A stretch of 64,000 nucleotides of DNA from Macrostomum lignano (Eukaryota): contig NIVC01003142.1 in NCBI GenBank assembly GCA_002269645.1, positions 1 to 64,000 of the forward strand, written 5' to 3'. This document shows positions 8,396-58,228 of this stretch, in pieces. The notes under the pieces are model-generated. The model saw only the letters and a program-made list of their open reading frames with translations, had not been told where the DNA came from and made no database searches. The stretch's first letter is position 1; each line of letters opens with the position of its first letter. A program made the translations under genes and the position numbers.

Positions 8396-8436
<41 letters not shown>

Positions 8437-8473
8437 CTGATTGGTTGATTGGTTGATTGATTGATTGATTGAC

Positions 8474-8516
<43 letters not shown>

Positions 8517-8573
8517 CTGATCGATTGATTGATTGACTGATCGATTGATTGATTGACTGATTGATTGATTGAC

Positions 8574-8620
<47 letters not shown>

Positions 8621-8807
8621 CTGATCGATTGATTGATTGACTGATCGATTGATTGATTGACTGATTGATTGATTGATTGATTGGTTGATTAATTGATTGA
8701 TTGATTGATTTATTGGTTGATTAATTGATTGACTGATTGATTGATTGATTGATTCATTGATTGATTGATTGATTGATTGACTGATTGATTGATTTATTGA
8801 TTGACTA

Positions 8808-8838
<31 letters not shown>

Positions 8839-8939
8839 AATTGATTGATTGATTGATGGATGGATGGATTGATTGATGGATGGATGGATTGATTGATAGA
8901 TTGATTAATTGACTGATTGATTGATTTATTGATTGACTA

Positions 8940-8974
<35 letters not shown>

Positions 8975-9071
8975 AATTGATTGATTGATTAATTGATTGA
9001 TTGATTGATGGATGGATGGATTGATTGATTGATTGATTGATTGAGTGATGGATGGATGGATTGATTGATTG

Positions 9072-9108
<37 letters not shown>

Positions 9109-18100: not shown

Positions 18101-19150
18101 TTTATTGTGCAAAATTGCTGGGTCGCAGACGGCTGCATGAGAAAGGGAGGTTGGTGCTGCAGACGGCTGGGGGAAGGGAGTTGGTGCTGCGGCTGGGAGA
18201 GGAGGGTTGGACGGTGCGGACGGCTGGGGGAGGGAGGTTGGTGTTGCAGACGGCTGGGGGAAGGGAGTTGGTGCTGCGGCTGGGAGAGGAGGGTTGGACG
18301 GTGCGGACGGCTGGGGGAAGGGTGTTGGTGTAAACGGCTGGGGGAGGGGAGTTGGTGCAGACGGCTGGGAGAGGGGGTTGGTGTAAACGGCTGGGGGAGG
18401 GGAGTTGGTGCAGACGGCTGGGAGAGGGGGTTGGACGGTGCGGACGGCTGGGGAGGGGGTTGGTGTAAACGGCTGGGGAGGGGAGTTGGTGCAGACGGCT
18501 GGGAGAGGGGGGTTGGACGATGCGGACGGCTGGGGGAGGGGGTTGGTGCAGACGGCTGGGGGAGGGGGGTTGGTGTAAACGGCTTGGGGGTGTAAACGGG
18601 TTAGAGTGGAAAAAATGCTGGCCCTACCTGATCGAGAGCCACCGAGTGCTCATTGGTGCAAGCGCACCGGGGCACAAAAGTACATGCAAGATACACTAAC
18701 ATCAGCAACAGATTGAAAACACAAACACCGCCCAATCACAGGGTGTGCCTCGAGCCCTGCCGACCAGAGGACCGCAACTGCAACTCGACCAACGGAAACA
18801 GCCTGAAATTCATCGTCATCAACGTACTGCCGAAGCACAACAACTTCACGCTAAAAATCATCGACGCCAGGCATGTGAACGTGAGAAACTGTCACTACAG
18901 ACTGTTGCAGAAGTCAGCTGACGCGCCATTCAACATTCGCAGCAGCTCCGGCCGAGTGACAATAATTCGAACCCCGGACCCCGACCTGGCTGGCAAACTC
19001 GGTCGAATGTTCCAGATGAAGATTAAGGCGGAATGCTACCGCGGCGGCGATAAGCCAATATTTCGCACAACCTTCAATGTGTATATCAGCATAGCGGCTT
19101 ACAACTATGGGATGCCGACTTTGCAGTTCCTGTTTCCCAGGTTCAACTGA
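1..19150 (+). CDS. hmcn: Hemicentin-family extracellular matrix protein, 5'-partial, 19 exons in window (~2,360 codons): N-terminal hemicentin region, ~20 Ig domains, 1 TSP1, EGF/cbEGF, fibulin-type C-terminal domain
   Basis: GT-AG exons with consistent phases: 1-178, 2212-2389, 3533-3893, 4027-4258, 4718-5366, 5561-6282, 6541-7385, 7644-8173, 9182-9972, 10141-10290, 10369-10494, 12063-12255, 12350-12432, 13002-13342, 13736-14015, 14675-14868, 15572-16129, 17763-18021, 18742-19150 (TGA). The first exons read [18 protein letters not shown] / GIPSHLYIN / [25 protein letters not shown], resembling the region after the vWA domain of hemicentins as I recall it. Repeated C...W...DxGxYxC Ig motifs follow. 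Four single-base deletions (~2245, ~4984, ~7370, ~15721) must be corrected. Confidence 0.9.
725..1490 (-). CDS. Secreted C-type lectin domain protein (~255 aa after correcting two 1-bp deletions), intronless, nested antisense in hemicentin intron 179-2211
   Basis: Signal-like [18 protein letters not shown]; CTLD motifs CPNPF..AGKCVFV, TWCE(A)[40 protein letters not shown]. Frames join at ~1338 and ~931. A third frame continues [22 protein letters not shown]...[11 protein letters not shown]...RNYS to TAA at 725-727. The 766 nt plus 2 restored bases give 256 codons. Confidence 0.8.
8178..9130. repeat. (ATTG)n microsatellite filling hemicentin intron 8174-9181
   Basis: Continuous ATTG with ATGG/ACTG variants, starting a few bases after the GTATGT donor. 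Confidence 0.97.
10508..11866. repeat. 12-bp minisatellite (TYWGTGTCTGTC)n, >100 copies, intronic
   Basis: Units TTAGTGTCTGTC / TCAGTGTCTGTC / TCTGTGTCTGTC. It produces the spurious VSVS and QTLR ORFs. Confidence 0.97.
11911..11972 (+). mobile_element. Internally deleted tRNA-derived SINE head
   Basis: A-box-like TAGCTCAGCGG, B-box-like GGTTCGAAT, then ACATTAATTTGGGGCT, which also follows the B box in the full SINE at 59252. Confidence 0.55.
12530..12935. repeat. Degenerate intronic tandem repeat (GTACTTTAG core)
   Basis: Recurrent TGTACTTTAGA / GATGCACTTAG motifs with a longer duplicated block. Confidence 0.7.
13388..13710. repeat. 16-bp minisatellite (GGACAGACAGACACTA)n, intronic
   Basis: About 20 copies with ACTGA variants. 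The reverse complement contains the 12-bp unit of the 10.5-11.9 kb array. Confidence 0.95.
14225..14570. repeat. 18-bp minisatellite (GTARTACTAGAGTGACAG)n, intronic
   Basis: Tandem units visible; source of the STRVTG ORF. Confidence 0.92.
15095..15545. repeat. 21-bp minisatellite (GTATCCAAGGTAAACAACTCC)n, intronic
   Basis: Tandem GTATCCAAGGTA cores every ~21 bp. Confidence 0.92.
15940..16129 (+). other. Single thrombospondin type-1 repeat within the hemicentin CDS
   Basis: [52 protein letters not shown]: WxxWxxCSVTCG and RxRxC motifs. Confidence 0.92.
16165..16295. repeat. Short GGGATT-based tandem repeat (~11/22 bp)
   Basis: GGGATTATTCGGGGATTTCACA-like units just after the donor at 16130. 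Confidence 0.75.
16983..17700. repeat. Pyrimidine-rich (TGTCTCCCCY)n repeat, intronic
   Basis: Continuous TGTCTCCCC units; the P/L/S/V and GETR ORFs are by-products. Confidence 0.95.
17763..19150 (+). other. EGF/calcium-binding EGF exon (17763-18021) and fibulin-type C-terminal exon (18742-19150) of hemicentin
   Basis: [28 protein letters not shown]...[10 protein letters not shown] (DVDEC and NxxGSYxC signature). The terminal exon ends [16 protein letters not shown]..., like fibulin C-terminal modules. Confidence 0.88.
18122..18600. repeat. G-rich minisatellite (GCAGACGGCTGGGGGAGGGGGTTGGT-like), intronic
   Basis: Recurring ACGGCTGGGGGAGGG...TTGGT units with dense G-runs. Confidence 0.9.
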
Positions 19151-32790: not shown

Positions 32791-33492
32791 TGTAGTTCTG
32801 TAGGGTTATGTAGAGGGTGTATGTTTATAGTACACATATGTTTTTCATTGTTGTATTGCATTATTTGTTGCTTTAAGACAAATTACTTGAAAAATGCTTC
32901 CCTTTACATATTTATTACAGGCTTTTGTTAAGGATGCTTACAATCATTTTGATGGTCAAGGCCCCTTGCTATTGTCTTTGTTGAATCAAGAATTTGTGGT
33001 TGGTGTTTGACTTCAGGCTGCAAATGTGAAAGAGGCAGCTAAATTGCTTAGCTTATCAATGCGTAATTGTAATGTTTGTATTGTCAATGGTATTGATTTG
33101 AAGTACTTGACCAGTGGTGGTTTCAGTGTCACTTTTGGGAATAGTGTTGCTACCATTTGTAAAAAAGGCTCACAGACTAAGTGTTGTCAGACTGTTTCAG
33201 CATGGCTCAAAGCCGCCAAAATAGGCCAATTGTGGTTGGAGAGCAATAATTGGAAGCTTTTATCTTACAGTACTTACCACCCTGCTTTTAAGCCGGGCAG
33301 GCAGCAAATAAATTATATATGAAAGAGGCCACTTGACACATTGAGATTGCCTGCTCTGTTTCAAAAGGCCTATTAAAGAGTGTTATTTGCCTAAGTTTAG
33401 TATGTGTATGGCAAGTATTTGCAGAATTAAGTTAGCTTAATGGTGATTTTGAGGATAGAGCAATAAGTGATGAGGAAGAGCAGAGTGTTAAT

Positions 33493-33945
33493 GATGAGCA
33501 GACAGCTGAAGATGAGCAGATGGCTGAAAATGAGCAGACAGCTGAAGATGAGCAGACAGCTGAAGATGAGCAGACTGCTGTAAATGAGCAGACAGCTAAA
33601 GATGAGCAGACAGCTGAAGATGAGCAGACTGCTGAAAATGAGCAGACAGCTAAAGATGAGCAGATAGCTGAAAATGAGCAGACAGCTGAAGATGAGCAGA
33701 TGGCTGAAAATGAGCAGACAGCTGAAGATGAGCAGACAGCTGAAGATGAGCAGATGGCTGAAAATGAGCAGACAGCTGAAGATGAGCAGACAGCTGAAGA
33801 TGAGCAGACAGCTGACAATGAGAAGATAGCCAAAAATGAGCAGACAGCTAAAGATGAGCAGACAGCTGAAGATGAGCAGACAGCTGAAGATGAGCAGACA
33901 GCTGAAGATGAGCAGACAGCTGAAGATAAGCAGATGGCTGAAAAT
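33493..33945. repeat. 18-bp minisatellite (GAGCAGACAGCTGAAGAT)n reading as (EQTAED)n
   Basis: About 25 copies; open acidic frame 33520-34014. Confidence 0.93.
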
Positions 33946-34099
33946 GAGAAAATGAAAAGTGGAGGAGCAAGCTGGACAGCAGCGCAACAACAGGCAAGAT
34001 GTGGACGCTGCTGAAGTGGATCAATGGCAGGGCACCAACCAAGAGCAAAGATCAGGTCTTAGAGCACGCAGGAAAATGATATAAGTCAGACAAGGCCAA

Positions 34100-36200
34100 G
34101 GCTAACATCATTGCGAAAGTGTACACCAAAGTCAGTGCCAACAGTTAGGGCCAAGCACAGATGGGCATGCAGAGAAATCAATGCCCACCTCTGGCATTGT
34201 GCCATGACCTCCACTACTGCAGACTGCCAAGCACTGACCTTGGACAAGTTGCAAGCAGCGTTGCAAACCATGGACACCAACAGGGACACTAGCATGGACA
34301 ACATCCACCCAAAGCTGCTGAAGGCGCTACCCCAAGAGGCACTTCAAGAGGTCCTGAAGCTGTTCAATTGGCTGTATGACTATGGCTTTGCTCCATAGAA
34401 CTGGCGCATGGCCTGCATCATTCTGTTGCTAAAAATGATAAACCAGCCAAGGATATCAGTTGCTGCTGCTGTTTATCATCTTTATAGACAACTGCTAAGA
34501 CAGTTGGACTCTATCCCAGACCTGCAGGTTAGCGGCTACGCCAACAATCTGGCCACCTGGACTAGCAACATAGGACCCACTGCAGCGACTGCTATGCAGT
34601 AGGCGGTGGTTGACGTTTTACAGTCATGGAATGAGATCTGGCTGCTGCCTGTGGCCACAGACAAGTGTTTGCTTACCCTGTTCTCTAGTGATCCTGCGTT
34701 GACCCCACAACCAATGCAGTGGATTGAGCAGCCCAAATTCCTTGGGCTTATATTTGACAGGCAACTGAAGTTCACGGTGCATATGGACAATGTGATATCC
34801 ATCTGTTGGAACTGCCTCAATCTGCTATAATGCCTCACAGGCAGCTCTAGGGGCTGGCATGCTGAGCTGGTACGCAGCACTTACATCTCCCTCATCTGCA
34901 ACAAAATGCTCTATAGGTCTTGTGCTTGGATGCTGTGGCTCACTTACACTGTCTGGCGGAAACTGGAGGTGGTGCAGCATAGCGCAGAGTGATCATTACT
35001 GGAGCAGTTGCTACCACCCCCATTGAGACCCTCTGCTGCGACAATAGGCTGCTCTTGGTCCAACAACAGTGTGAGATACTTTGGAGCACCAAGCTTGACC
35101 AGTAACTTAGGCTAAAGGCCAGCTTGCCTAGACCCTGTCTCACTAGCCAGCCAACCAGACAAAGGCTGAAGCAGCAAGTCTAGAGCCCAGGCCTAGAGAG
35201 GCCTTACTAGTGCTGACCTGGCTGAAGTGGCTTGGCTTGTTAGATGCAGCGGACCTCCCTCCCTGGCAGAATTGGAGAAACTACGTCACTTTCACCATAT
35301 CAACCAACAAAGCTAGGCAAGTGACATGCGCTAGAAACCTTGAGATGGCGCAAGCAAAGCTCACTCAGGCATGCCCCAACCCCGACATCACCATCTTCAT
35401 GGATGGGTGACAGGTCAGTGCAGAAGGAGGGAGGAGGCGGTGGAGCCATTCTATCATTTACCAAAAAGGGCACTAGTTAGATGGGCAAACCAGCAACCAG
35501 ACCAGTCTTCAGGGGGGGGGGGCAGCCGGTCTCCTTGCTGCAAGCAGAACTCATGGCCCTGGAACTCGTGCTAGCTTGGCTCAGTGAGCAACGGGACTGG
35601 AACACTGCACTGGTGGCCTTGGACAACAAGAGTGGCCTTTTAGCAGTGCTGAGGGTACAACCCACTTGAAATCAAGATCTGCAAACTGCTTGACAAGATC
35701 AGTCTTTCCGGATGGAAGATTGTGCTCTGCTGGATGCTGGCCCACTGCAGGTTAGAAGGCAACCAGGCTATGGACAGAATAGCCAAAGTGATAATACTGC
35801 CCTAGGAGGCGGGATTCCTGGCCAGTGTGGTCTGCCGATGGCTAGCAGCTGACACTAAGACCAAGAGCAAAAATAGCAAGCACTGGACCCACAGCAGGAT
35901 GGTAGGCACATATGGCAGCCTTGGTATGGCGAGACACCTAGACTACAAGGATAGGGCAGAAGCAGTCAGCTTTATGCATTTTTGCACTGGCCACTTGCTA
36001 AAGCTAGGGGCCTACTGTCGCAGGATAGGATAGACCACTGATGCAACCTGCCTAGCATGTGGGACTGAGGACAAAACAGTTAAGCATTTGAGCTGCTATT
36101 GCCTAGCCACAGAGCTCAGGAGAAGTCTAGATGGGCCCACCAAGCTGCAACACCTCAACGAGCACCCAGAGGCAGCGCTCAGGTACTGGGCCTAGTACCG
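34100..36200 (+). mobile_element. Degraded non-LTR retrotransposon ORF2 (RT + RNase H + C-terminal zinc motif), I/Ingi/Loa-like group
   Basis: DNIHPKLLKAL...W..ACIILLLK; YANN (decayed YADD); PKFLGLIFDRQLKF; RNase H ITIFMDG, QAELMAL, HCRLEGNQAMD; CLACGTEDKTVKHL..C; followed by an (AAC)n tail. Many stops and frameshifts. Confidence 0.88.
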
Positions 36201-36250
36201 CACATGGTGGAACCAACTGAGCAGTAGCAAAGGATGTTGCACTTTAGCTA

Positions 36251-37830
36251 TAACAATAATAACAACAACAACAGCAGCAGCAGTACCAATAGCACCAGTA
36301 GCAAGAACAGCAACAGCAGCACTAGCGGCACTAGCAGCAAGAACAGCACCAGCAGCAATAGCAGCACTAGCAGCACTAGCAGCAAGAACAGCAATAGCAG
36401 CAAGAACAGCAATAGCTGCACCAGCAGCAAGAACAGCAATAGCAGCACCAGCAGCAAGAATAGCAATAGCAGCACCAGCAGCAAGAACAGCAACAGCAGC
36501 ACCAGTAGCAAGAACAGCAACAGCAGCACCAGTAGCAAGAACAGCAACAGCAGCACTAGCAGCACCAGCAGCAAGAACAGCAATAGCAGCACCAGCAGCA
36601 AGAATAGCAACAGCAGCACTAGCAGCACCAGCAGCAAGAACAACAACAGCAGCACCAGCAGCAAGAACAGCAACAGCAGCACCAGTAGGAAGAACAGCAA
36701 CAGCAGCACCAGTAGCAAGAACAGCAATAGCAGCACTAGCAGCACTAGCAGCAAGAACAGCAATAGCAGCAAGAACAGCAATAGCTGCACCAGCAGCAAG
36801 AACAGCAATAGCAGCACCAGCAGCAAGAATAGCAATAGCAGCACCAGTAGGAAGAACAGCAACAGCAGCACCAGTAGCAAGAACAGCAACAGCAGCACCA
36901 GTAGCAAGAACAGCAACAGCAGCACTAGCAGCACCAGCAGCAAGAACAGCAATAGCAGCACCAGCAGCAATAATAGCAACAGCAGCACTAGCAGCACCAG
37001 CAGCAAGAACAGCAACAGCAGCACCAGCAGCAAGAACAGCAACAGCAGCACCAGTAGGAAGAACAGCAACAGCAGCACCAGTAGCAAGAACAGCAACAGC
37101 AGCACTAGCAGCACCAGCAGCAAGAACAGCACTAGCAGCATCAGCAGCAAGAACAGCAATAGCAGCACCAGTAGCAAGAACAGCAACAGCAGCACCAGTA
37201 GCAAGAACAGCAACAGCAGCACTAGTAGCACCAGCAGCAAGAACAGCAATAGCAGCACCAGAAGCAAGAATAGCAACAGCAGCACTAGCAGCACCAGCAG
37301 CAAGAATAGCAACAGCAGCACTAGCAGCACCAGCAGCAAGAACAGCAACAGCAGCAAGAACAGCAACAGCAGCACTACTATTGGAGGCAGAAGGTGGGCT
37401 TGGACCCGGCTGGAAATTGCTCTTTTTGCAACGAATAAGAATTGAAAGACTACTGGATGACGTGTAGTAGATGGGACTCTATCAGGATTTGGTGTGGAGT
37501 GGAAGGAATAAGATCGCTTCAAGACGAGCCCAAGGTTTTAAAATTCCTTCAGCTGGCCCACCCACGGTGGCTCAGCTGAATGGTTTCCTGGCCGAAGACA
37601 CACACACAGCAGCACTAGCAGCACCAGCAGCAAGAACAGCAATAGCAGCACCAGTAGCAAGAACAGCAACAGCAGCACCAGTAGCAAGAACAGCAACAGC
37701 AGCACCAGTAGCAAGAATAGCAACAGCAGCACTAGCAGCACCAGCAGCAAGAACAGCAATAGCAGCACCAGCAGCAAGAATAGCAATAGCAGCACCAGCA
37801 GCAAGAACAGCAACAACAACAGCAGCAAAA
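36251..37830. repeat. AGC/AAC/ACC-based cryptic minisatellite (24/33-bp units such as AGCAGCAAGAACAGCAACAGCAGCACC), interrupted at ~37380-37607
   Basis: Trinucleotide-phased tandem units; gives S/N/T/K, poly-L and A/T/P/R ORFs. Confidence 0.95.
37379..37607 (+). mobile_element. 5'-truncated LINE 3' end with (CA)n tail, inserted in the satellite
   Basis: A unique segment reading GNCSFCNE*ELKDYWMTC (C..C...C zinc-knuckle-like), ending GACACACACAC; AGCAGCACTA on both sides. Confidence 0.5.
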
Positions 37831-39023
37831 GATTGCCTTAGACTAACAGCAGGATGATGCGCTGATGGAGAGCTCCATTAATAAGGATGTTTGACTATAA
37901 TTTTTCCTTAGCAGGTCTAGCCTACAGTGTTTACTCTTATTCCCAGAGCTTCTAAGGAGAAAGACATCCTAATACACTCCAGTGGCTATAGCCAATAGTT
38001 CCACCATGGAGCCAGAACATACTGGAGGTACATAGTCAGAAATGCGCATACTAAATGTACTGCCTCAGCTAATTGAGGCAAATGGCATATACATTAATGG
38101 TAAGAATGAGCATACTTCCCTAGAAGACATTTTATTTCTCAAACTTAGCAGATCTTGCCTGCCATGCCATTTTTAGCAAATCTTTTCAATCTATTTGGTT
38201 CTTGCAAGATCTTTTACAAATGGAGGTACATTTATTTTGTTATTAGTTTGGCTAAAGTGTTTTAGATGAATTATATTTTATTTTATGACAAAACAGGACT
38301 ATAAACTTAGGAAAATGCAATTTGAAGCATTTCATAAGATATTAGAAATCTGCTTCATCTTGCAAGATATGTGCAAACTAAAAAGTCAAACATTTTTTGA
38401 AAAGTTTTGTTCCTAAATAATCTTGTTTAAATAATTGAATTTGCATTGAAATTGCACTTATCTAATAGTTTTTGTTAGTGCTATAAACTTAAGACTTAAA
38501 ACATTGTTTATTTAATTAAAAATGGGACATTTTGATTAAAAAATTTGCATTGCTATTTGTTAAAAATTGAATAATTTAGCTACTTTCCAATTTCTTGGTC
38601 TATTTTGATTAGTAGTTGTGATTGATAATACCAATTTATCTGACAATTATTATACAGCTTATATAAAGTATCAATTAGATATGTCAATTAGGTCAAAAAG
38701 ATCCAAAGTGTGACATTGTGGCGATATGCTAGTGTATTTTTATTATTGCAATATTATGCTTTGTGCATTCTTAGTTAGTTAGTATTTGCGTGCGCGCTGA
38801 TTGGCTAGTGTGTTTCAGTGCATGTGCACTGCGTCGGGTTGTTTGCGTTTTACGCGTGGCTAGCATGGTGGGGTCTGAGCAGTCAGGCTAACCACCCTCT
38901 TTAGTCCTAGGGTTGATGAATAAGAATAAACAAGTCATATAAGAGCCCAGTTGTGTGTACTGGCTCTCCACGTTCAACTTTCCTACGCATTCACTACAAG
39001 CCTTTAGCTTCAATATATTACAA

Positions 39024-39076
39024 TGGCGACGAGGATGGGATACGAACCCACGCGGGGAAACCCCAATGGATTAGCA
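39024..39076 (-). other. 53-nt copy of the 3' half of mature tRNA-Ser(GCT) (positions 33-76) occupying the PBS
   Basis: The minus strand reads TGCTAA TCCAT T GGGG-TTT-CCCC GC GTGGG TTCGTAT CCCAT CCTCGTC G CCA: anticodon GCT, long variable-arm hairpin, T-arm, acceptor strand, G73 discriminator, CCA. Confidence 0.93.
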
Positions 39077-39080
39077 TACC

Positions 39081-40436
39081 GTGTTGAGAAACTTGTGTCT
39101 ACCTGCCAAGGTCTCCGACAAGTCTCTGGCCCAGTTGACCAAGATTCTGGAGGACCACTACGCTCCAAAGCCGTCCGAGTTGGCAGCCAGATTTCGGTTC
39201 CAAAGACGCCTGCAGCAGCCTGGCGAGAGCCTTGCCAAGTTCGTTGCCAGCCTGAAGGCCTTGTCAAGTCACTGCAATTTCAGTGCTTCCCCGTGTGAGC
39301 ACTGTCACTTCGGCGGCACTCTAGATGAGCGACTGCGAGACCAGCTGGTTTTCGGCCTGCACAGCGATGCCTACCGAGCGAAGCTGCTGGAGGAGAAAAA
39401 TCCCACCTTCAACTCGCTGCAGGAGAGAGTTCTATCCCTCGAGGCAGTGGAGCGGTCATCATCGGAGATGGCGCAGAAGTCAGCAGCACAAGTAGCCCAG
39501 CTGCGCGCTCACCAGCTGAATAAGCGCCAAGGACCCAAGCCAGCGCTCGAAGGTTCGCAGCAGCGCAAGGGCGGTGGCAACAACAGCAGAAGCGGAGTCG
39601 GCAGCAGCGGCAACACCGGCAGTGGCACCTGTGCAAGCTGCAGCGGTGCTCACAGTCGCCAGCAGTGTAAGCTGCGAGACGCTAAATGCCACGCGTGCGG
39701 AAAGACGGGCAATATTCGCAAGGTCTGTCGCTCAGCCAAGCTGCATTTTCTACAAGAAGCGACACCGACACCACCACCGGAAGCCTCCGCGCAGCTGCCG
39801 ATTTTTGCCGTGCAGCCGGCTGGTGGCAATGCGGGTCCGACGGTGCAGCTGCAAGTCAATGGCCAGCCATGCCGGTTTGTCATCGATACGGGCTCCGCCG
39901 TCACTCTGATGCCCGAGTTTCTGCAGCTCATGCTTCTACCGCGGCTCTCCATGTCACCGTCCGTTGCTGTCCTACGCACCTTCACCGACGAGCAGTTCCG
40001 CCCTCTCGGCCAAGCGTTGGTCTCCGTTCAGCAAGATGGTCAGCAGCTGCAGTTGCCCCTGCTGATCATCAAGCACGGCGACACGGCCCTGCTCGGTCGC
40101 GACTGGCTGGCCAAGCTGCGGCTAGACTGGCCGAGCATCATGGCGCAGGTTCACGCCGTCCACGACTCCGAAGACATCGGCAGCATCGTCAAGGAGTTCG
40201 CACCAGTCTTCGAGGACGGCCTAGGCGAGTTCCGGCACGGCCAGGTGCGGCTTCAAGTCTCCGAGGACGCTCAGCCCAGGTTCTTCAAGGCGCGGCCGGT
40301 CCCCTACGCGCTGCGCGAGCGCGTCGACGCCGAACTGCAGCGCATGGAGTCCAGTGGCATCATAACCGCCGTGAAGCACAGCGACTGGGCTGCGCCGATC
40401 GTGCCGGTTCGGCACGATCCGGCACGAACAAGCTGA
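39081..40436 (+). CDS. gag-pol: Gag (N-terminally truncated) + aspartic protease + start of RT
   Basis: LRNLC..K.SDKSL..L.KILEDHYAPKPSE..ARFRF..R.Q.PGES; two Cys knuckles (CASCSGAHSRQQC, CHACGKTGNIRKVC); IDTGS protease; LLGRDWL; WAAPIVPV. Confidence 0.9.
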   Translation: MLRNLCLPAKVSDKSLAQLTKILEDHYAPKPSELAARFRFQRRLQQPGESLAKFVASLKALSSHCNFSASPCEHCHFGGTLDERLRDQLVFGLHSDAYRAKLLEEKNPTFNSLQERVLSLEAVERSSSEMAQKSAAQVAQLRAHQLNKRQGPKPALEGSQQRKGGGNNSRSGVGSSGNTGSGTCASCSGAHSRQQCKLRDAKCHACGKTGNIRKVCRSAKLHFLQEATPTPPPEASAQLPIFAVQPAGGNAGPTVQLQVNGQPCRFVIDTGSAVTLMPEFLQLMLLPRLSMSPSVAVLRTFTDEQFRPLGQALVSVQQDGQQLQLPLLIIKHGDTALLGRDWLAKLRLDWPSIMAQVHAVHDSEDIGSIVKEFAPVFEDGLGEFRHGQVRLQVSEDAQPRFFKARPVPYALRERVDAELQRMESSGIITAVKHSDWAAPIVPVRHDPARTS

Positions 40437-42898
40437 CATACAACGCGGCGAGCAAGCCGGAGCACTACCCGCTGCCCCGCATCGAGGACCTCTTCGCCAA
40501 GCTCGGCGGCGGCTGCAAGTGGACCAAGCTCGATCTGTCCAACGCCTTCTTGCAGCTTCCTCTGGCCGACGACAGCAAGGCGTTTCTCACTATCAACACG
40601 CCCAGAGGCCTCTTCCAGGTCAATCGCCTCCCATTCGGCATAACGAGCGCCAGCGCGATCTTTCAACGCACCCTGGACACCCTGCTGGGAGACCTGGATG
40701 CCGTCCAAGTCTTCGTCGACGACATTCTGGTCACCGGCAGCACCCTGCAACAGCACAAGAGGAACCTGGCGCTGGTCCTGCGGCGCTTGAAGGACGCCGG
40801 CCTGCGGCTCAACAAAGAGAAATGCAAATTCTTCGAAGACTCTGTTGAGTACCTCGGCCATCGGATCGACGCCAGCGGACTCAAGCCGCTGCCGGACCGG
40901 GTCGCCGCCGTCCAGGACGCGCCAGCACCCAAGGACGTCAGCCAGCTGCGCTCGTTTCTGGGCATGCTAGCGCAGTACTGCAAGTTCCTGCCCAACTTGT
41001 CTACCGTCCTGGCGCCGCTCCACCAGCTCTTGGCCAAGAACACCCGCTGGTCATGGGGGCCACCGCAGCAACAGGCATTTGCAGAGGCCAAGCGGCTGCT
41101 GCTCGAGTCACCGGTTCTCGTGCACTACAATCCGAATCTGCCGCTGCGATTAGAGTGTGACGCCTCTCCCTACGGCCTGGGGGTCGTCTTGACGCACCGC
41201 ATCGACGACAAGGACTGCGCGGTCGCCTTCGCTAGCCGCAGCCTAACAGCAGCGCAGCGCGGCTACTCCCAGCTGGACAAGGAGGCGCTGGCCATCATGT
41301 TTGGTCTGCACCGGTTTCACCAGTTCCTCTATGGCCGGCGGTTCACCATCGTCACCGACCATCTGCCGCTGCTGGGTCTGCTGGGCGAGCGCAAGGGCAT
41401 TCCGGCACACGCGGCCGCCCGGATGCAGCGCTGGGCCATTCGGCTGTCGAGCTACGACTACACGCTGGAGTTCCGGCCGACCGAAAAGCATGCCAACTGC
41501 GACTCGCTCTCGCGGCTGCCGCTGCCGCACCTGTTCGAGGAGGAGCCGGCCGTCAACTCGCTGCTGCTCGACGAGGGCTCCGGATCGGCCATCACGGCGC
41601 TGGCGGTGGCGCGGCACACTAGGACAGACGTCTCACTCGGTCGGGTGCTTCGCTGCTTGCAGACCGGCGCGCCCATCGGCGACGACCTGAGCGACTTCGC
41701 CCGGCGGCAGTCGGAGCTGTCAGTCGACCAAGACTGTGTCCTGTGGGGCGCAAGGGTCGTTGTGCCTACAGCGCTGCGTCGACGCGTGATCCAAGAGCTA
41801 CATCAGGCGCATCCCGGCATCAGCAGAATGCGCGCCCTGGCTCGCAGCTACGTGTGGTGGCCCGGCCTCGACGGCGATCTGGAAGCTGCGGCCAAGTCCT
41901 GCCGCACCTGTCAGCTCAACCAGCCCGACCCGCCCAAGGCGCCGGTGCAACCGTGGCCTCTGCCATCCGAACCGTGGGAGCGCCTGCACATCGACTTTGC
42001 TGGTCCGGTCGACGGTCATACGTACCTGGTGGTAGTCGATGCTCATAGCAAGTGGCCGGAGGTCCAGCGGATGCGCGGTACAACGTCGGCGGCCACCATC
42101 GCGGCTCTGCGGGAGATGTTCGCGCGCCAAGGCATTCCGCGCACCCTGGTGTCCGACAACGGGCCGCAGTTCGCCTCCGCCGAGTTCGCCGAGTTTACCC
42201 GGGCCAACGGCATTCGTCACGTGTTCTCGGCGCCGTTTCATCCCGCCACCAACGGCCAGGCCGAGAGGTTTGTGCAAGTCCTGAAGCGACATCTGCTCAA
42301 GAGCGGCCACTCTGACGTCGAGCTTCAGCGACTGCTGCTCAGCTACCGCAACACCCCACACAGCATCAGCGGCGCAGCCCCGAGTCAGCTGCTCATCGGC
42401 CGTCGGCTTCGCTGCCGTCTGGACCTCCTGGCACCGTCGCTGGCTGACGACGTCCAACGGCGGCAAGAGCGGCAGCTGCAGGGACGCAGACCAGCGCGCG
42501 AGTTTCAGCCGGGTGATCACGTCCTCCTCCGCGACTACAGCGCCGGCGCGAGAGCCGGCGACACGCCACGCTGGGCTGAGGGTGTCGTCACGGGCGCCGG
42601 CAGCCGCAACTACACGGTTGACTCGGAGCGAGGCCAGCACTTCCGGCACGCTGATCAGCTGGTGGCAGCCCGCGCTGACTCCGCCGACACCGTCCATCCG
42701 CCGCCTGCTACGGATGACGGCGCCGCCCCGAGTGACAGCGGCGTGCAAAGCGCTGACGCCGCAGCCGTCGCCGACACGGCCTGCGGGGCGTCATCCGGCA
42801 CTGACGACGAGCATGCGAGCGGCGTGCGACACGAGCCGGGCACTACACGGCGGTACCCACTGAGGGTTCGAGGCCCACCTCAGAGACTTCAGCTGTGA
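40420..42898 (+). CDS. pol: Pol remainder: reverse transcriptase, RNase H, integrase
   Basis: YPLPRIEDLF, LDLSNAFLQ, RLPFG, FVDDIL, YLGHRI; CDASPYGLG, YSQLDKEALA, TDHLPL; HPG...C..C zinc finger, HIDFAG, SDNGPQF, NGQAERFVQ. Confidence 0.95.
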
Positions 42899-44211
42899 AG
42901 GGGAGAACTGACTCAGGGGGGAAGTGTGACATTGTGGCGATATGCTAGTGTATTTTTATTATTGCAATATTATGCTTTGTGCATTCTTAGTTAGTTAGTA
43001 TTTGCGTGCGCGCTGATTGGCTAGTGTGTTTCAGTGCATGTGCACTGCGTCGGGTTGTTTGCGTTTTACGCGTGGCTAGCATGGTGGGGTCTGAGCAGTC
43101 AGGCTAACCACCCTCTTTAGTCCTAGGGTTGATGAATAAGAATAAACAAGTCATATAAGAGCCCAGTTGTGTGTACTGGCTCTCCACGTTCAACTTTCCT
43201 ACGCATTCACTACAAGCCTTTAGCTTCAATATATTACACAAAGAAAAAAAATTGAACTCAAGAAACTCTAAACATCTTTTTAATTCTTTGGTTTAGCAGT
43301 ACCAAAAGTTAGTGGAGTGCTTTCTCTAGGCTCCTATTAGTAACTCTATTCCCTAAGGTAAGGAATAAAGATTTTTCTTTAATAAGTGTTTACTTTGTAC
43401 ATTTTTATGTCAGCACTGTGCTAATATTAGTGATTTTTACCAAATTGTTCAACTTTGATTTTTGAACTTCATTATTTTAACTAGACTCTTTTTGCCTAGG
43501 CCTAGCTATAGTTTATAACTAGACCAAGCTAACTTGCTAAAAAAATCAGGTGAATAAAAAGTGGGAGTATAGTCCACTTTAGCAAACTCCTATTTGAGAG
43601 AATAGGGGCATTGAGACAATAATAAATCAATATATTGAAAGGCCCTAGTCTACAAATTTGTAAGTCAAGCTTTTAATAGCCTAGCTAGTTAGTTATATCT
43701 ATTGTAAATTTCAATTGTAAATATGATTATTTAATACAATCAGTTATAGTATGGATATATTGTCCTTTAAAGTTTTTTAGCCTTTTAAAGTTAATGACTT
43801 CCTTATTTATCTTTATTTTGGCTTGCTATTGGAATAAATGTTGAAAACACATGGACAAATACTTTAGCCTAGCTAAATTGCCTATCAAATTACTTTATAT
43901 ATTATGCATATTATATTAGGATGCTAATAAATTATATTGAGATATGATTTTTACAATTGAGCCAATTTTTTAGAACTATAATCTATCTTTTTTATATAAA
44001 TTACAATCCAAAATAGACACTGTATTAGAGCTAACTAACTAAAAATATTTCTACTTGCCTTTTCAGTTTACTAATTTTGAGAAGTTGAAGTGGTCAAAGG
44101 TGAGCTGGCTGTTTATTTTTTACCAGTTTTAATATTTCTATAGTATTGGTTTAGTAGAGTTTTTTATAACATTTCTATTCTACCTTTAATTAAGGTGAGA
44201 AACAAATTAAT

Positions 44212-45399: not shown

Positions 45400-45965
45400 G
45401 AAGAGAGGAGAAGTGAAAGAGGGGATAAAAGAAAATATAAAAGATAATAGAAGAGATGAGGGGTGAGGACGATGAGAGAGAGGGGGAGAAGAGGGGAGAG
45501 AGGAAAAGCAAGAGGAGAGCAGAGAGTAAAGGGAAGAGAGAAGAGATAAAGATACATCTCTACATCTCTAAGGTTGTAGAGATGAGAAAGGTGGAAGGAG
45601 AGATGAGAAATGAGAGATGAGAGATAAAGGAGAGAGGAGAGTGGAGAGAGAGAAGAGAGGGAGAGAGAGTATAGAAAATGGAAAAGAAGAGAAAAAGTAA
45701 AGAGAAAGGAAAGTGAGGAGTCAAAAGAGGGGAAAGAAAAGAGTATAGAGGAGAGAGGTGAGAGAACATATAAGACAGAGATGCCAGATTAAAGAGGGGG
45801 ATAAGAGAGCAGAGACGAGAGTGAACAGATGGAAGATGGGAGAGTAGAGAGAACAGAGGAGAGATAAGAGATTACAGAGACGAGAGGAGAGAGGAGAGAC
45901 AAATGTAGAGAATTGAGTGAGGAGAGAGAGGAGAGGAAAGAGAGAGAGAAAAGAGATAAGAGATA

Positions 45966-45996
<31 letters not shown>

Positions 45997-46550
45997 AAAG
46001 ATAAAAGAAGAGAAAGGAAAGATGAGAGAGCAAAGGCAAGAGAGAAAAGAGGTGAGGGAAGAGACGAGAGAAGAGGGGAGAGAGGAGAGAGGAAAGAAGA
46101 GATGAGAGGAGAGAGAGAGGAACGAGTAGAGAGGGGAAAGATGAGAGAGTAGAGGAGACAGTTAAGAGAAGAGAGAAAAGAATAGAGAGGAGAAGGAAGA
46201 GACGAGAGAAGAGGGGAGAGAGGAGAGAGGAGAGGAGAGAAAAGAAGAGGGAAGAGATGAGATAAGAGATATGAAAGAGAAGAGAGATGAGGGAAGATAC
46301 GAGAAAAGATGGGAGAGAGGAGAGAGGAGAGGAGAGAGAAAACGACAGAGTAGAGAGGAGAGAGGAGAGGAGAGAAAACGAAAAAGTAGAGAGGAGAGAG
46401 GAGAGGAGAGAGAAAAGAAGAGACAAGAGATGAGATAAGAGAGATGAAAGAGAAGAGAGATGAGGGAAGATACGAGAGAAGAGGGGAGAGATGAGAGAGG
46501 AGAGACGAGGGACGAGAGAGAAGAGAGGAAACAGAAGAGACGATAGAAAT
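45400..46550. repeat. Polypurine (GA-rich) low-complexity tract
   Basis: About 1.1 kb almost exclusively G/A on the + strand. Confidence 0.93.
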
Positions 46551-56498: not shown

Positions 56499-56818
56499 TC
56501 AAACGAATCCAGCACGAATGTCCCAAGACGTACCAGGAACGAATCCAGTAGGATAAACTTCGTTTCTATAGGCCCCTCCGCAGGTCTTGCTGCTGTCTCC
56601 GCCGCACGCCATTTTGCAATCGGAGTCGCTAGCCTTGCCGTGCTTGCCATACGAGTTGCCGCAGAGGCACCAGTTACTGGCTTAAAGACCGGCGTACTTG
56701 TAGTTCTGAGATTTGCAGCGGCTCACGCAGGACTCGGGCGTAGTCGACGACGAATGATGGAGAACCGGCAGGTCTCTGTCACTCCCCTTGTCCACGTAGC
56801 AGCCGAGGCGCTTCGCTG
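56499..56818 (-). pseudogene. Duplicate WSC-domain exon with premature stop
   Basis: 56507-56808 matches 57751-58052 except CTC CAA to CTT TAA (stop at 56684-56682); own acceptor TTTACAG in the same phase; own terminal TGA at 56501-56499. Confidence 0.85.
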
Positions 56819-56959: not shown

Positions 56960-57290
56960 TTTAGGTACCAATCAAGTTTAGGTAGCGTTTCTTCTGTGTA
57001 GCAACAATTTGGGTGACATCTGGGTGACATTTATTTAGGTACCCTGTCATCTGGGTGACATCAATTTAGGTAACATCTCATCTAGGTAGCATCAATTTAG
57101 GTAACATCTCATCTCATCTAGGTAGCATCAATTTGGGTGACATCTTGGTGATATTTATTTAGGTAACATCTCATCTAGGTAGCATCAATTTAGGTAACAT
57201 CTCATCCAGGTAGCATCAATTTAGGTAACATCTCATCTAGGTAGCATCAATTTAGGTAATGTCTTATCTGAGCTGCATCAATTTAGGCAA
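56960..57290. repeat. ~31-bp minisatellite (TAGGTAGCATCAATTTAGGTAACATCTCATC)n between the two WSC copies
   Basis: Recurring TAGGTAGCATC / TAGGTAACATC half-units. Confidence 0.88.
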
Positions 57291-57733
57291 CATTGTTGTA
57301 CTTTACCTGCTGCCATCTTTGTTACAACGTTGCCGTTGCTTGTCGCCATAGACATCTTAGTTCTGCACTACGTTCAATTAAGCGCGTGCAGCGCAGCCCC
57401 CTCCCCATTAAATTACAACCAGCTCTCAGTAAACTACAAACATCTTATCTAGGTAGGCATCTAATTTTTCCAGAGTCTGATTCAGGTAGCATCTAATTTG
57501 GACAACATCTCATTTTGCTCGTGAAGCAAAGCTTAACCCTAAATATTGCATGCCCTAACCCAATATTTATACTTTCTAACTCCAGCATTAATTTACTTCT
57601 CAAGCAATCAACTGCTTCACCGATCAAGAAAACGAGCGGAAGGAATGCAAAGATGCCGAATGAGCAGCCCTCTTTCGCCCCAACTGACACAAAGTAAGCG
57701 AGCTTGACTACCTTGACGACTTAAATTAGCACG

Positions 57734-58228
57734 CTACTGACAAATGACTAATCCAGCACGAATGTCCCAAGACGTACCAGGAACGAATCCAGTAGGATAA
57801 ACTTCGTTTCTATAGGCCCCTCCGCAGGTCTTGCTGCTGTCTCCGCCGCACGCCATTTTGCAATCGGAGTCGCTAGCCTTGCCGTGCTTGCCATACGAGT
57901 TGCCGCAGAGGCACCAGTTACTGGCTTGGAGACCGGCGTACTTGTAGTTCTGAGATTTGCAGCGGCTCACGCAGGACTCGGGCGTAGTCGACGACGAATG
58001 ATGGAGAACCGGCAGGTCTCTGTCACTCCCCTTGTCCACGTAGCAGCCGAGGGAAGTAAGTGCTGCAAAATGTTTTAAGCGAGAACGTGACTTTTCAGTC
58101 TTCACTTTTTTCACTGAGCAAACGGAGGCATGGATTAGAGTCCTTCCTTTCTCTATAGGCTTACCTTCAGCACATCCCGCGGCCAGACACAGGCAGACGA
58201 GAATCGCTGGCAGAGGTTGAGTAGCCAT
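57734..58228 (-). CDS. Small secreted single-WSC-domain protein (~131 aa), 2 exons (58228-58165, 58062-57734)
   Basis: Signal peptide MATQPLPAILVCLCLAAGCAE; GTAAGC donor and TTTTGCAG acceptor in phase 1; WSC signature LGCY.D...R.L...T.ESC...C.....YAGLQ...WC.CGN...C...C.G.....CGG. Confidence 0.92.
   Translation of the reverse strand: MATQPLPAILVCLCLAAGCAEGKPIEKGRTLIHASVCSVKKVKTEKSRSRLKHFAALTSLGCYVDKGSDRDLPVLHHSSSTTPESCVSRCKSQNYKYAGLQASNWCLCGNSYGKHGKASDSDCKMACGGDSSKTCGGAYRNEVYPTGFVPGTSWDIRAGLVICQ

What the first reader, a model, noticed from the sequence alone, without database searches (positions are those of the whole stretch)
39022..39090. LTR retrotransposon carries the whole 3' half of its tRNA-Ser primer, with apparent footprints of m1A58 and m3C32, fused into the middle of gag
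Seen: directly after the 5' LTR, 39024-39076 is the reverse complement of tRNA-Ser(GCT) positions 76 to 33, i.e. 53 nt instead of an ~18-nt PBS. It includes CCA, the T-arm, the serine-type variable arm and the anticodon. The first 18 nt are a perfect PBS. The 19th (39042) is the only deviation from consensus (T-loop TTCGTAT, not TTCGAAT), exactly position 58. The match ends at U33, one base short of C32, and the sequence jumps to ...ACC GTG TTG AGA AAC (VLRNLC) inside gag, so the leader and the usual Gag N-terminus are missing. Established: CCA is added post-transcriptionally in eukaryotes; m1A58 normally stops plus-strand strong-stop synthesis and causes RT misincorporation when read through; eukaryotic tRNA-Ser carries m3C32, which blocks RT. 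Inference: RT read through m1A58, stalled at m3C32, then strand-transferred into gag, leaving a genomic record of tRNA modifications. Alternatively the family uses an extended PBS matched to anticodon-cleaved 3' tRNA halves as primer or as a small-RNA target.
Basis: partly seen in the sequence, partly recalled or inferred. Interest (0 to 1): 0.92.

Follow-up and report, generated by a model that had tools for sequence, protein, structure and literature searches.

The report
Retrotransposon copy that swallowed its tRNA primer
One recently inserted, defective copy of a flatworm (Macrostomum lignano) gypsy-type retrotransposon carries a 53-base copy of the mature tRNA-Ser(GCU) that primed it in place of the first 49 codons of gag: a rare integrated product of a known reverse-transcription error, whose single mismatch and end point fall where that tRNA is expected to carry m1A58 and m3C32.

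Summary
Window 39024-39076 is the exact reverse complement of a mature tRNA-Ser(GCT), from CCA back to U33. It differs from real tRNA genes only at position 58 (39042).

The element (38709-43238) is a Ty3/gypsy-type LTR retrotransposon of Macrostomum lignano. It has 100% identical 314-nt LTRs and a 5-bp target duplication.

A 99%-identical sibling copy at another locus (L002) shows the normal state. The gag ATG lies directly after the LTR, and only a 10-nt PBS (TGGCGACGAG) is embedded in codons M-A-T-S. Three further related families also fuse the PBS to the gag start. So the extension is specific to this copy, not family-wide, and there is no leader to lose. In the window copy, 148 nt of gag are replaced by 43 extra tRNA-derived bases, with a 1-2-nt microhomology at the junction. 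Gag is now out of frame.

Best explanation: plus-strand strong-stop DNA read past position 58 with a misincorporation. It ended opposite U33, next to C32 in a GGACU (m3C) motif. It then primed non-homologously inside gag, and the product was integrated.

The mechanism is known from retrovirus and Ty1 work. A germline-integrated example with these footprints is a neat new instance. The modifications themselves are inferred, not shown.

The parts
38704..38708 (+). 5' copy of the 5-bp target-site duplication, CAAAG
   Evidence: The same pentamer follows the 3' LTR at 43239-43243.
38709..39022 (+). 5' LTR, 314 nt, TGTGAC...TTACA
   Evidence: It is 100% identical to 42925-43238.
39023..39023 (+). 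One-base spacer A between the LTR and the PBS; also the A of the family's gag ATG
   Evidence: The same ACA|A|TGG arrangement is seen in L001, L002, L003 and L011.
39024..39033 (+). The family's normal 10-nt PBS, TGGCGACGAG (complement of tRNA positions 76-67)
   Evidence: The match between the window and L002 ends here. L002 continues CTCCGCG (gag codons S-S-A).
39034..39076 (+). 43 extra bases copied from the primer tRNA (complement of positions 66 to 33: rest of the acceptor stem, T-arm, serine-type variable arm, anticodon AGC at 39073-39075, U33)
   Evidence: Identical to the tRNA-Ser(GCT) genes L004, L006, L007 and L010 except at 39042. Absent from L002.
39042..39042 (+). Position-58 mismatch: A in the plus strand where T is expected
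   Evidence: All six tRNA genes have A58 (TTCGAAT); the window has TTCGTAT in tRNA sense.
39076..39077 (+). Junction between the tRNA copy and gag, with 1-2 nt of microhomology (A or AT)
   Evidence: tRNA identity ends at 39076. Identity to L002 (GCATAT|ACCGTG, L002 10158 onward) starts at 39076. The complement of C32 would be G, but 39077 is T, as in gag.
39078..40436 (+). Remainder of gag (from codon 54) plus protease. It has no in-frame start; TAG at 39072-39074 lies in the gag frame, and the ATG at 39023 is in another frame
   Evidence: ORF list; Pfam aspartyl protease hits; alignment to P0076 and relatives.
40409..40428 (+). Second rearrangement: 39 nt of the sibling are replaced by 20 nt that form an inverted copy of the adjacent sequence, causing a frameshift between PR and RT
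   Evidence: Pairwise differences; sequences; perfect 10-nt inverted repeat at 40397-40406 and 40410-40419.
40301..42898 (+). RT, RNase H and integrase reading frame
   Evidence: Pfam RVT_1, RT_RNaseH_2, Integrase_H2C2 and rve. 99% identical to M. lignano BOX15_Mlig026022g1.
42915..42924 (+). Polypurine tract AGGGGGGAAG, abutting the 3' LTR
   Evidence: Sequence read directly.
42925..43238 (+). 3' LTR
   Evidence: 100% identical to the 5' LTR.
43239..43243 (+). 3' copy of the target-site duplication, CAAAG

Best explanation
This is a dead-on-arrival copy of a Macrostomum lignano Ty3/gypsy-type retrotransposon, made by an aberrant second (plus-strand) strand transfer. Normally the element is primed by mature tRNA-Ser(GCU) on a 10-nt PBS that overlaps the gag start codon. 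Here, plus-strand strong-stop DNA, which copies the tRNA still attached to the minus strand, did not stop at position 58. It inserted A opposite residue 58, the outcome expected for a bypassed m1A. It then copied the T-arm, variable arm and anticodon, and ended after copying U33, directly before C32. In eukaryotic tRNA-Ser that residue is the polymerase-blocking m3C. The resulting 43-nt non-complementary 3' tail could not pair at the PBS. Instead it primed on the minus strand 148 nt further in, at gag codon 53/54, using 1-2 nt of microhomology. The minus strand could still pair through the 10-nt PBS to complete the LTR. The resulting DNA was integrated, giving a 5-bp duplication and identical LTRs, and the plus-strand version was fixed by repair or replication. 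What the sequence shows: the structure, the tRNA identity, the CCA, the single mismatch at 58, the end at U33, the sibling without the extension, the microhomology and the integration hallmarks. What is inferred: that residues 58 and 32 were methylated, the order of pairing events, and the heteroduplex resolution.
For: The 53-nt antisense copy of mature tRNA-Ser(GCT) is contiguous with the PBS and includes CCA. Real tRNA genes with this exact body have A58 and C32, carry a GGACU context, and encode no CCA. The sibling L002 (99.0% identical, own target duplication GTTGG) has LTR|ATGGCGACGAG|CTCCGCG and an intact 1320-aa gag-pol. Related families L001 and L003 have the same 10-nt PBS in the ATG, and L011 has 18 nt. 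The window and L002 realign from 39076 / L002 10158. Identical LTRs, a target duplication and a polypurine tract show a bona fide integration. Literature: m1A58 is the plus-strand strong-stop signal, and read-through products are non-complementary after transfer (PMC8599865). Human tRNA-Ser(GCT) carries m3C32, in a GGNCU motif (PMC7969016). m1A and m3C cause misincorporation, and an MMLV-type RT gives mostly T mismatches (PMC8062790). In Ty1, which also has a 10-nt PBS, intermediates that copy further into the tRNA accumulate as dead ends (PMC2939329).
Against: Only one same-family sibling could be examined, because the host genome could not be searched by DNA. The M. lignano tRNA-Ser(GCU) gene itself was not retrieved; the matching genes come from unidentified environmental eukaryotes. 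No tRNA modification data exist here for flatworms. The end at U33 would also arise from run-off on a tRNA cut between positions 32 and 33, or from a pause unrelated to m3C. The junction microhomology is minimal (1-2 nt). The copy carries other defects: a snap-back indel at 40409-40428, a zinc-knuckle His-to-Asn change, and about 17 substitutions relative to L002. It may therefore descend from an already aberrant parent rather than record the error in its own cycle.
Confidence: 0.75

Rival explanations
1. The read-through and aberrant transfer are the same, but synthesis ended at U33 because the template ended there. The primer, or the tRNA remnant left on the minus strand, would have been cut in the anticodon loop between positions 32 and 33 (a 3' tRNA half, or RNase H or nuclease damage). 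No m3C32 block would be involved.
For: The end point lies in the anticodon loop, where tRNA halves are generated. Sequence alone cannot tell a block from a template end.
Against: C32 sits in the GGACU context that matches the m3C motif GGNCU, and tRNA-Ser(GCT) is a documented m3C32 substrate in humans. From general knowledge, not tested here, characterised loop cleavages fall mostly 3' of positions 34-38. The position-58 misincorporation shows that the template was a modified, mature tRNA.
Confidence: 0.15
2. The aberrant structure was not created in this insertion event. It was inherited from an earlier aberrant parent that is mobilised in trans, so there is a small non-autonomous subfamily with a 53-nt tRNA-complementary PBS region.
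For: The copy differs from L002 at about 17 substitutions and has a second rearrangement, yet its LTRs are identical. So at least some of its defects predate, or arose during, the last cycle. The copy number could not be measured.
Against: No second copy with the extension was found in anything searchable, but those collections do not contain the host genome. The origin of the first such copy would still be the mechanism given above.
Confidence: 0.2
3. The family normally uses an extended PBS that pairs with the 3' two-thirds of tRNA-Ser, or that serves as a target for 3' tRNA fragments.
For: An 18-nt PBS exists in one related family (L011).
Against: The 99%-identical sibling and two related families have only 10 nt. 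No relative extends past position 59. In the window the extension destroys the gag reading frame.
Confidence: 0.02
4. This is an artefact or a secondary event: a chimeric assembly, or a later insertion of a tRNA pseudogene or SINE fragment into the element. Position 58 would be a random mutation or a T58 tRNA variant.
For: Raw reads could not be inspected. An isolated tRNA-Ser(GCT) 32-73 fragment with G at position 58 exists in an unrelated contig (L005).
Against: The copy is seamless with the PBS, antisense, starts at CCA and has no target duplication of its own. The flanking LTRs show 0 differences in 314 nt, so a post-integration change hitting exactly position 58 of 53 nt is improbable. 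All six genes have A58.
Confidence: 0.04

Closest known systems
Plus-strand strong-stop termination at m1A58 of the primer tRNA, and read-through when it fails (HIV-1; PMC8599865)
   Same: Plus-strand DNA copies the primer tRNA from its 3' end. Position 58 is the normal stop. Read-through gives a 3' tail that is not complementary after the second transfer.
   Different: In that work, read-through products are treated as non-integrating dead ends. Here one was rescued by priming inside gag and was integrated in a germline. The next stop is at 32/33 of tRNA-Ser, whereas position 54 was discussed for tRNA-Lys3.
[quoted passage not shown]
   Same: A short 10-nt PBS, and tRNA sequence beyond the PBS that is normally not inherited (the sibling L002 diverges from the tRNA at the 11th base). 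From memory, not verified here: the Ty1 PBS lies within the gag (TYA) reading frame, as it does in this element.
   Different: Ty1 is a Ty1/copia element primed by initiator tRNA-Met. The Ty1 dead-end product described carries 2 extra bases, not 43. No integrated example is cited there.
tRNA sequences captured in retroviral DNA: an MLV circle with a tRNA between the LTRs (Colicelli and Goff 1986) and hairpin-induced tRNA-mediated recombination in HIV-1 (Konstantinova et al. 2006), both as summarised in PMC12220202
   Same: Reverse-transcribed mature tRNA segments of about 60-70 nt become part of retroelement DNA, in the HIV-1 case in place of deleted element sequence.
   Different: Those cases were unintegrated circles or engineered viruses in culture, involved spurious tRNAs, and lay at other positions. 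Here the cognate primer is copied at the PBS of a natural element in a genome. The original papers were not available to read.
Half-tRNA-primed elements (copia, Ty5) and 3' tRNA-fragment targeting of the PBS (the latter reviewed in PMC7472051)
   Same: They also involve the tRNA anticodon-loop region or 3' tRNA fragments in LTR-element biology.
   Different: From memory, those elements pair with an internal or 5' part of initiator tRNA. Here the PBS pairs with the CCA end, and the extra sequence is a copy of the tRNA, not a pairing site used by the family.

Membership tests
Ty3/gypsy-type (Metaviridae) LTR retrotransposon | Direct LTRs with TG...CA ends, flanked by a short target-site duplication | tested here: met
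   314-nt LTRs, 100% identical, TGT...ACA; 5-bp CAAAG on both sides.
Ty3/gypsy-type (Metaviridae) LTR retrotransposon | Domain order gag-PR-RT-RNase H-integrase | tested here: met
   Pfam: aspartyl protease in ORF1, then RVT_1, RT_RNaseH_2, Integrase_H2C2 and rve. The subclade (for example Mag) was not tested.
Ty3/gypsy-type (Metaviridae) LTR retrotransposon | A PBS complementary to a tRNA 3' end next to the 5' LTR, and a polypurine tract next to the 3' LTR | tested here: met
   TGGCGACGAG lies one base after the LTR. AGGGGGGAAG abuts the 3' LTR.
Primer-tRNA read-through / aberrant plus-strand transfer product | A tRNA-complementary sequence contiguous with the PBS, in PBS orientation, starting from the post-transcriptional CCA and running past position 58 | tested here: met
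   39024-39076 matches tRNA genes from position 73 back to 33, plus CCA. The genes lack CCA.
Primer-tRNA read-through / aberrant plus-strand transfer product | Sibling copies of the same family lack the extension and keep the sequence that is deleted here | tested here: met
   L002 (99% identical, separate insertion) has a 10-nt PBS and an intact gag. Only one sibling was available.
Primer-tRNA read-through / aberrant plus-strand transfer product | The deletion starts at the PBS, and the junction is non-homologous or has microhomology | tested here: met
   L002 10012-10159 is missing. There is a 1-2-nt overlap (A/AT) at 39076-39077.
Primer-tRNA read-through / aberrant plus-strand transfer product | The mismatch and stop coincide with Watson-Crick-face modifications actually present in the host tRNA (m1A58, m3C32) | not testable with these tools
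   The positions fit, but no flatworm tRNA modification data or host tRNA gene could be obtained.
Family-wide extended PBS | The extension is present in intact, coding-competent family members | tested here: not met
   L002, L001 and L003 have 10 nt and L011 has 18 nt. None passes position 59.
tRNA gene, tRNA pseudogene or tRNA-derived SINE insertion | A complete cloverleaf or 5' promoter half, its own insertion hallmarks, and independence from the PBS | tested here: not met
   ARAGORN finds 0 genes and Rfam finds no tRNA hit. Only positions 33-76 are present, antisense, and fused to the PBS.

The most novel reading that the evidence does not exclude
Integrated read-through cDNAs like this one may be a recurrent class of natural 'tRNA-seq reads' that can be mined from eukaryotic genomes. 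They would record hard-stop tRNA modifications (m1A58, m3C32) in lineages with no epitranscriptome data. In this clade, where the PBS is fused to the gag start codon, occasional inheritance of the tRNA copy could also be how PBS length is reset (10 nt in L001-L003 against 18 nt in L011, which reads M-A-T-R-M-G exactly like the window copy) and how new N-terminal Gag codons arise. The isolated fragment in L005 (positions 32-73, G at position 58) could be a second footprint.
Probability: 0.2. Interest if true: 0.7.

Novelty: new member of a known kind. Interest (0 to 1): 0.5.

Why it matters
It shows that a plus-strand strong-stop DNA that overran its tRNA primer, usually described as a dead end that cannot be integrated, can be rescued by microhomology priming and fixed in an animal germline. 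The fixed copy preserves a single-molecule record of where a retrotransposon reverse transcriptase misread (position 58) and where it stopped (before position 32) on a native tRNA. If the modification reading is right, this is indirect evidence for m1A58 and m3C32 on tRNA-Ser(GCU) in a flatworm. It also suggests a simple genome-mining screen: an LTR end, then a PBS, then more than 18 nt of tRNA complement. The comparison further exposes an unusual clade-wide layout, with the PBS embedded in or abutting the gag start codon and no leader between the LTR and gag. That layout makes every tRNA over-copy a coding lesion. As a single defective copy it has no evident function for element or host.

Tried and rejected
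- **Other copies with the extension.** Exact-protein look-ups of the chimeric 91-aa ORF and of the copy-specific 1070-aa ORF found nothing on record. DNA scans of viral and prokaryotic collections for CCA plus acceptor plus T-arm in antisense found 0. None of these collections contains the host genome, so this is not evidence of uniqueness.
- **Protein search caveat.** The protein search failed to return P0076 for two gag queries that are about 99-100% identical to its N-terminus. Missing near-identical hits therefore mean little.
- **Host tRNA gene.** No tRNA gene is present in the window, L001 or L002. The matching genes come from unidentified metagenome contigs.
- **tRNA gene or SINE reading.** Rejected.
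- **Family-wide extended PBS.** Rejected.
- **L005 as a second example.** There is no LTR or gag context on the 1.58-kb contig, and the fragment has three substitutions. It is left unresolved.
- **Original papers.** Those by Lauermann and Boeke, Colicelli and Goff, and Konstantinova et al. are not held. They are cited only through papers that describe them. The Olsen and Swanstrom 1985 paper on defective retroviral DNA is recalled from memory only, and a search for its title phrase found no paper holding it.
Full report
**1. The observation**

Directly after a 314-nt LTR (38709-39022) and one spacer base (A, 39023), the window reads TGGCGACGAGGATGGGATACGAACCCACGCGGGGAAACCCCAATGGATTAGCA (39024-39076). 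I scanned metagenome contigs with the anticodon-loop-to-T-arm part of its reverse complement, leaving position 58 free. Seven contigs matched.

Six of them carry genes that ARAGORN calls tRNA-Ser(GCT), lying in clusters of tRNA genes and followed by T-runs. Four of these (L004, L006, L007, L010) have the same sequence: GACGAGGTGGCCGAGTGGTTAAGGCGATGGACTGCTAATCCATTGGGGTTTCCCCGCGTGGGTTCGAATCCCATCCTCGTCG.

- The window segment is the exact complement of positions 33-73 of this gene plus CCA.
- There is one difference. The T-loop reads TTCGTAT in the window and TTCGAAT in all six genes. That is position 58, at 39042.
- None of the genes is followed by CCA, so the template was a mature tRNA.
- All genes have C32, in the context GGACU.
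- The window leaves the tRNA immediately after the complement of U33 (39076).
- The 18-mer PBS occurs once in the window, against none expected in shuffles. There is no tRNA gene in the window.

**2. What surrounds it**

The element spans 38709-43238. Its features are:

- two LTRs that are 100% identical;
- a 5-bp target duplication, CAAAG;
- a polypurine tract, AGGGGGGAAG, abutting the 3' LTR;
- the domain order gag-protease-RT-RNase H-integrase.

This makes it a Ty3/gypsy-type element. Its pol region is 99% identical to Macrostomum lignano protein BOX15_Mlig026022g1 (P0076), so the host is this flatworm or a very close relative. The rest of the window carries exons with Ig I-set and EGF domains from an animal gene.

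**3. The decisive comparison**

The locus encoding P0076 (L002, M. lignano contig NIVC01000860.1) is a separate insertion of the same family. It has its own 5-bp duplication, GTTGG, and is 99.0% identical over the internal region.

There the LTR is followed by A|TGGCGACGAG|CTCCGCGCTGGG... This reads ATG GCG ACG AGC TCC = M-A-T-S-S. So the Gag start codon lies directly after the LTR, and the PBS is only 10 nt and sits inside the first four codons. There is no leader between the LTR and gag.

| Locus | Relation | PBS layout |
|---|---|---|
| L001 | M. lignano family, gag-PR query region 58% identical | 10-nt PBS in the ATG |
| L003 | metagenome relative, pol 71% identical | 10-nt PBS in the ATG |
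| L011 | metagenome relative, gag 47% identical | full 18-nt PBS, in frame (M-A-T-R-M-G-S) |
| L013 | more distant relative | 18-nt tRNA-Ser-type PBS with one mismatch, one base upstream of the ATG |
| L012 | fish relative | 9-nt match at the ATG |

No relative extends beyond tRNA position 59. The 53-nt extension is therefore specific to this copy.

**4. Anatomy of the lesion**

Relative to L002, the window copy lacks L002 10012-10159. That is 148 nt, gag codons 5-53. In its place it has 43 nt (39034-39076) that continue the tRNA complement.

- Identity with L002 resumes at 39076 (L002 10158): L002 reads ...GAGGAGGCATAT|ACCGTGTTGAGAAAC and the window reads ...GGATTAGCAT|ACCGTGTTGAGAAAC.
- tRNA identity ends at 39076 (A, opposite U33), and gag identity begins at 39076/39077 (AT). 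So the junction has 1-2 nt of microhomology.
- The base after U33 (T, 39077) comes from gag. It is not the G that C32 would template.
- The net change is 148 minus 43 = 105 nt, but the junction leaves the upstream ATG out of frame with gag: 55 nt from ATG to ACC, against 159 in L002.
- The anticodon-loop complement places TAG (39072-39074) in the gag frame. Gag therefore cannot be made from this copy.

**5. Mechanism (inference resting on established reverse-transcription steps)**

The orientation and position match what plus-strand strong-stop DNA produces when it copies the primer tRNA still attached to the 5' end of minus-strand DNA: the complement of the tRNA, reading from its 3' CCA, contiguous with U5.

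That synthesis normally stops one base before m1A58. Products that run on are no longer complementary after the second transfer (PMC8599865).

In a family with a 10-nt PBS, any copying beyond 10 nt already gives a mismatched 3' tail. In Ty1, which also has a 10-nt PBS, such intermediates accumulate as dead ends (PMC2939329 citing Lauermann and Boeke 1997).

Here the polymerase passed residue 58 by inserting A instead of T. In tRNA-seq terms that is an A-to-T mismatch. m1A is known to give such misincorporation, and an MMLV-type RT gives mostly T mismatches (PMC8062790).

It then copied through the T-arm, the variable arm (whose loop is UUU, so it has no counterpart of the human m3C47d) and the anticodon, and ended opposite U33. 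Human tRNA-Ser(GCT) carries m3C32, and m3C sites lie in a GGNCU motif (PMC7969016). The tRNA here has GGACU.

My proposal for the remaining steps is as follows.

1. The 3' end of the overlong strong-stop DNA primed on the minus strand at the A/AT microhomology in gag.
2. The minus-strand 3' end paired as usual with the 10-nt PBS and completed the LTR.
3. This left a heteroduplex with a 43-nt loop opposite a 148-nt loop.
4. After integration, that heteroduplex was resolved in favour of the plus strand by repair or replication.

These pairing and resolution steps are inferred, not shown.

**6. How strong the modification footprints are**

*Position 58.* This is the only mismatch in 53 nt, at the one residue where a retroelement RT is expected to err. 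The two LTRs have 0 differences in 314 nt, so a random post-integration change hitting exactly this base is improbable. All six genes have A58. I rate the m1A58 reading at about 0.8.

*The stop before C32.* This fits m3C32. A template end at 32/33 (a cleaved tRNA) or an unrelated pause would look the same. I rate m3C32 at about 0.55.

Neither modification has been measured in flatworms here, and the M. lignano tRNA gene itself could not be fetched.

**7. When the error happened**

Identical LTRs date the insertion as recent. They do not show that the error happened in this cycle. The copy also differs from L002 in other ways:

- a complex snap-back rearrangement at 40409-40428, where 39 nt are replaced by 20 nt that form a perfect 10-nt inverted repeat with the adjacent sequence. 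This shifts the frame between protease and RT;
- a zinc-knuckle His-to-Asn change at 39711;
- about 17 substitutions.

The copy could therefore be the product of one very error-prone cycle, or the offspring of an already aberrant parent mobilised in trans. Only a genome-wide copy count can decide.

**8. Comparison with what is known**

The mechanism is a known kind of reverse-transcription accident.

- tRNA read-through past position 58 has been studied for HIV-1 (PMC8599865).
- Over-copied Ty1 intermediates are described as dead ends (PMC2939329).
- Reverse-transcribed tRNA segments have been found in an MLV circle junction, and in HIV-1 in place of a deleted hairpin (Colicelli and Goff 1986; Konstantinova et al. 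2006; both as summarised in PMC12220202).

I found no report of a germline-integrated LTR-retrotransposon copy with this structure, but my literature search was limited to the held library. I therefore file it as a new member (a natural, integrated instance) of a known kind.

**9. Verdict**

- 'Leader missing' and '18-nt PBS' are corrected: there is no leader in this family, and its PBS is 10 nt inside the gag start.
- Interest is moderate. It is an elegant single-molecule fossil and a usable idea for genome mining, but it is one defective copy made by a known mechanism.

Noticed in passing
L002 9998-10011; L001 9998-10011; L003 228-241; L011 332-353; L013 1478-1505; L012 892-905: Across this gypsy clade the PBS for tRNA-Ser is fused to, or abuts, the gag start codon, with no leader after the LTR. 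Three families have a 10-nt PBS inside M-A-T-S. One has an 18-nt PBS in frame (M-A-T-R-M-G-S, the same first six codons as the window's chimeric ORF). One has an 18-nt PBS one base before the ATG. A fish relative has a 9-nt match.
   Followed up: partly
window 40397-40428 (L002 11491-11529): A second complex lesion in the same copy. 39 nt of the sibling are replaced by 20 nt that are an inverted copy of the adjacent GATCGTGCCG (perfect 10-nt inverted repeat with a 3-nt loop). This looks like a snap-back template switch, and it shifts the frame between protease and RT.
   Followed up: partly
L005 1492-1545 (metagenome contig Ga0209679_1133821): An isolated fragment of the same tRNA-Ser(GCT), covering only positions 32-73. 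It has G at position 58 and a T-to-A change in the acceptor stem, and is followed by ACA rather than CCA. It is not a tRNA gene. An ATGGCGACGAG motif lies about 420 nt away (1103-1113, minus strand). It could be an older footprint of the same kind of event, or a decayed pseudogene.
   Followed up: partly
window 39711; L002 13826: Both family copies are individually defective. The window copy has His-to-Asn in the Gag zinc knuckle (CHACGKTGNIRKVC). L002 has a 1-nt deletion that changes the C-terminal reading frame of its annotated 1320-aa protein.
   Followed up: no
window 4900-18600: Open frames with multiple immunoglobulin I-set domains, and calcium-binding EGF domains (16976-18592). These look like exons of a large extracellular-matrix or adhesion-type host gene.
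   Followed up: no
window 33381-34028; 36165-37500; 45476-46547; 56969-57293; 56503-56802 and 57747-58046: Several tandem arrays (18-nt period; 9-nt period, CAG/CAA-rich and open in both strands; GA-rich; 31-nt period), and a 300-nt direct repeat pair 1244 nt apart.
   Followed up: no
tool behaviour: The word-indexed protein search did not return P0076 for gag queries nearly identical to its N-terminus, although it returned it for the pol query. So the absence of close hits in that tool is not evidence of absence.
   Followed up: no
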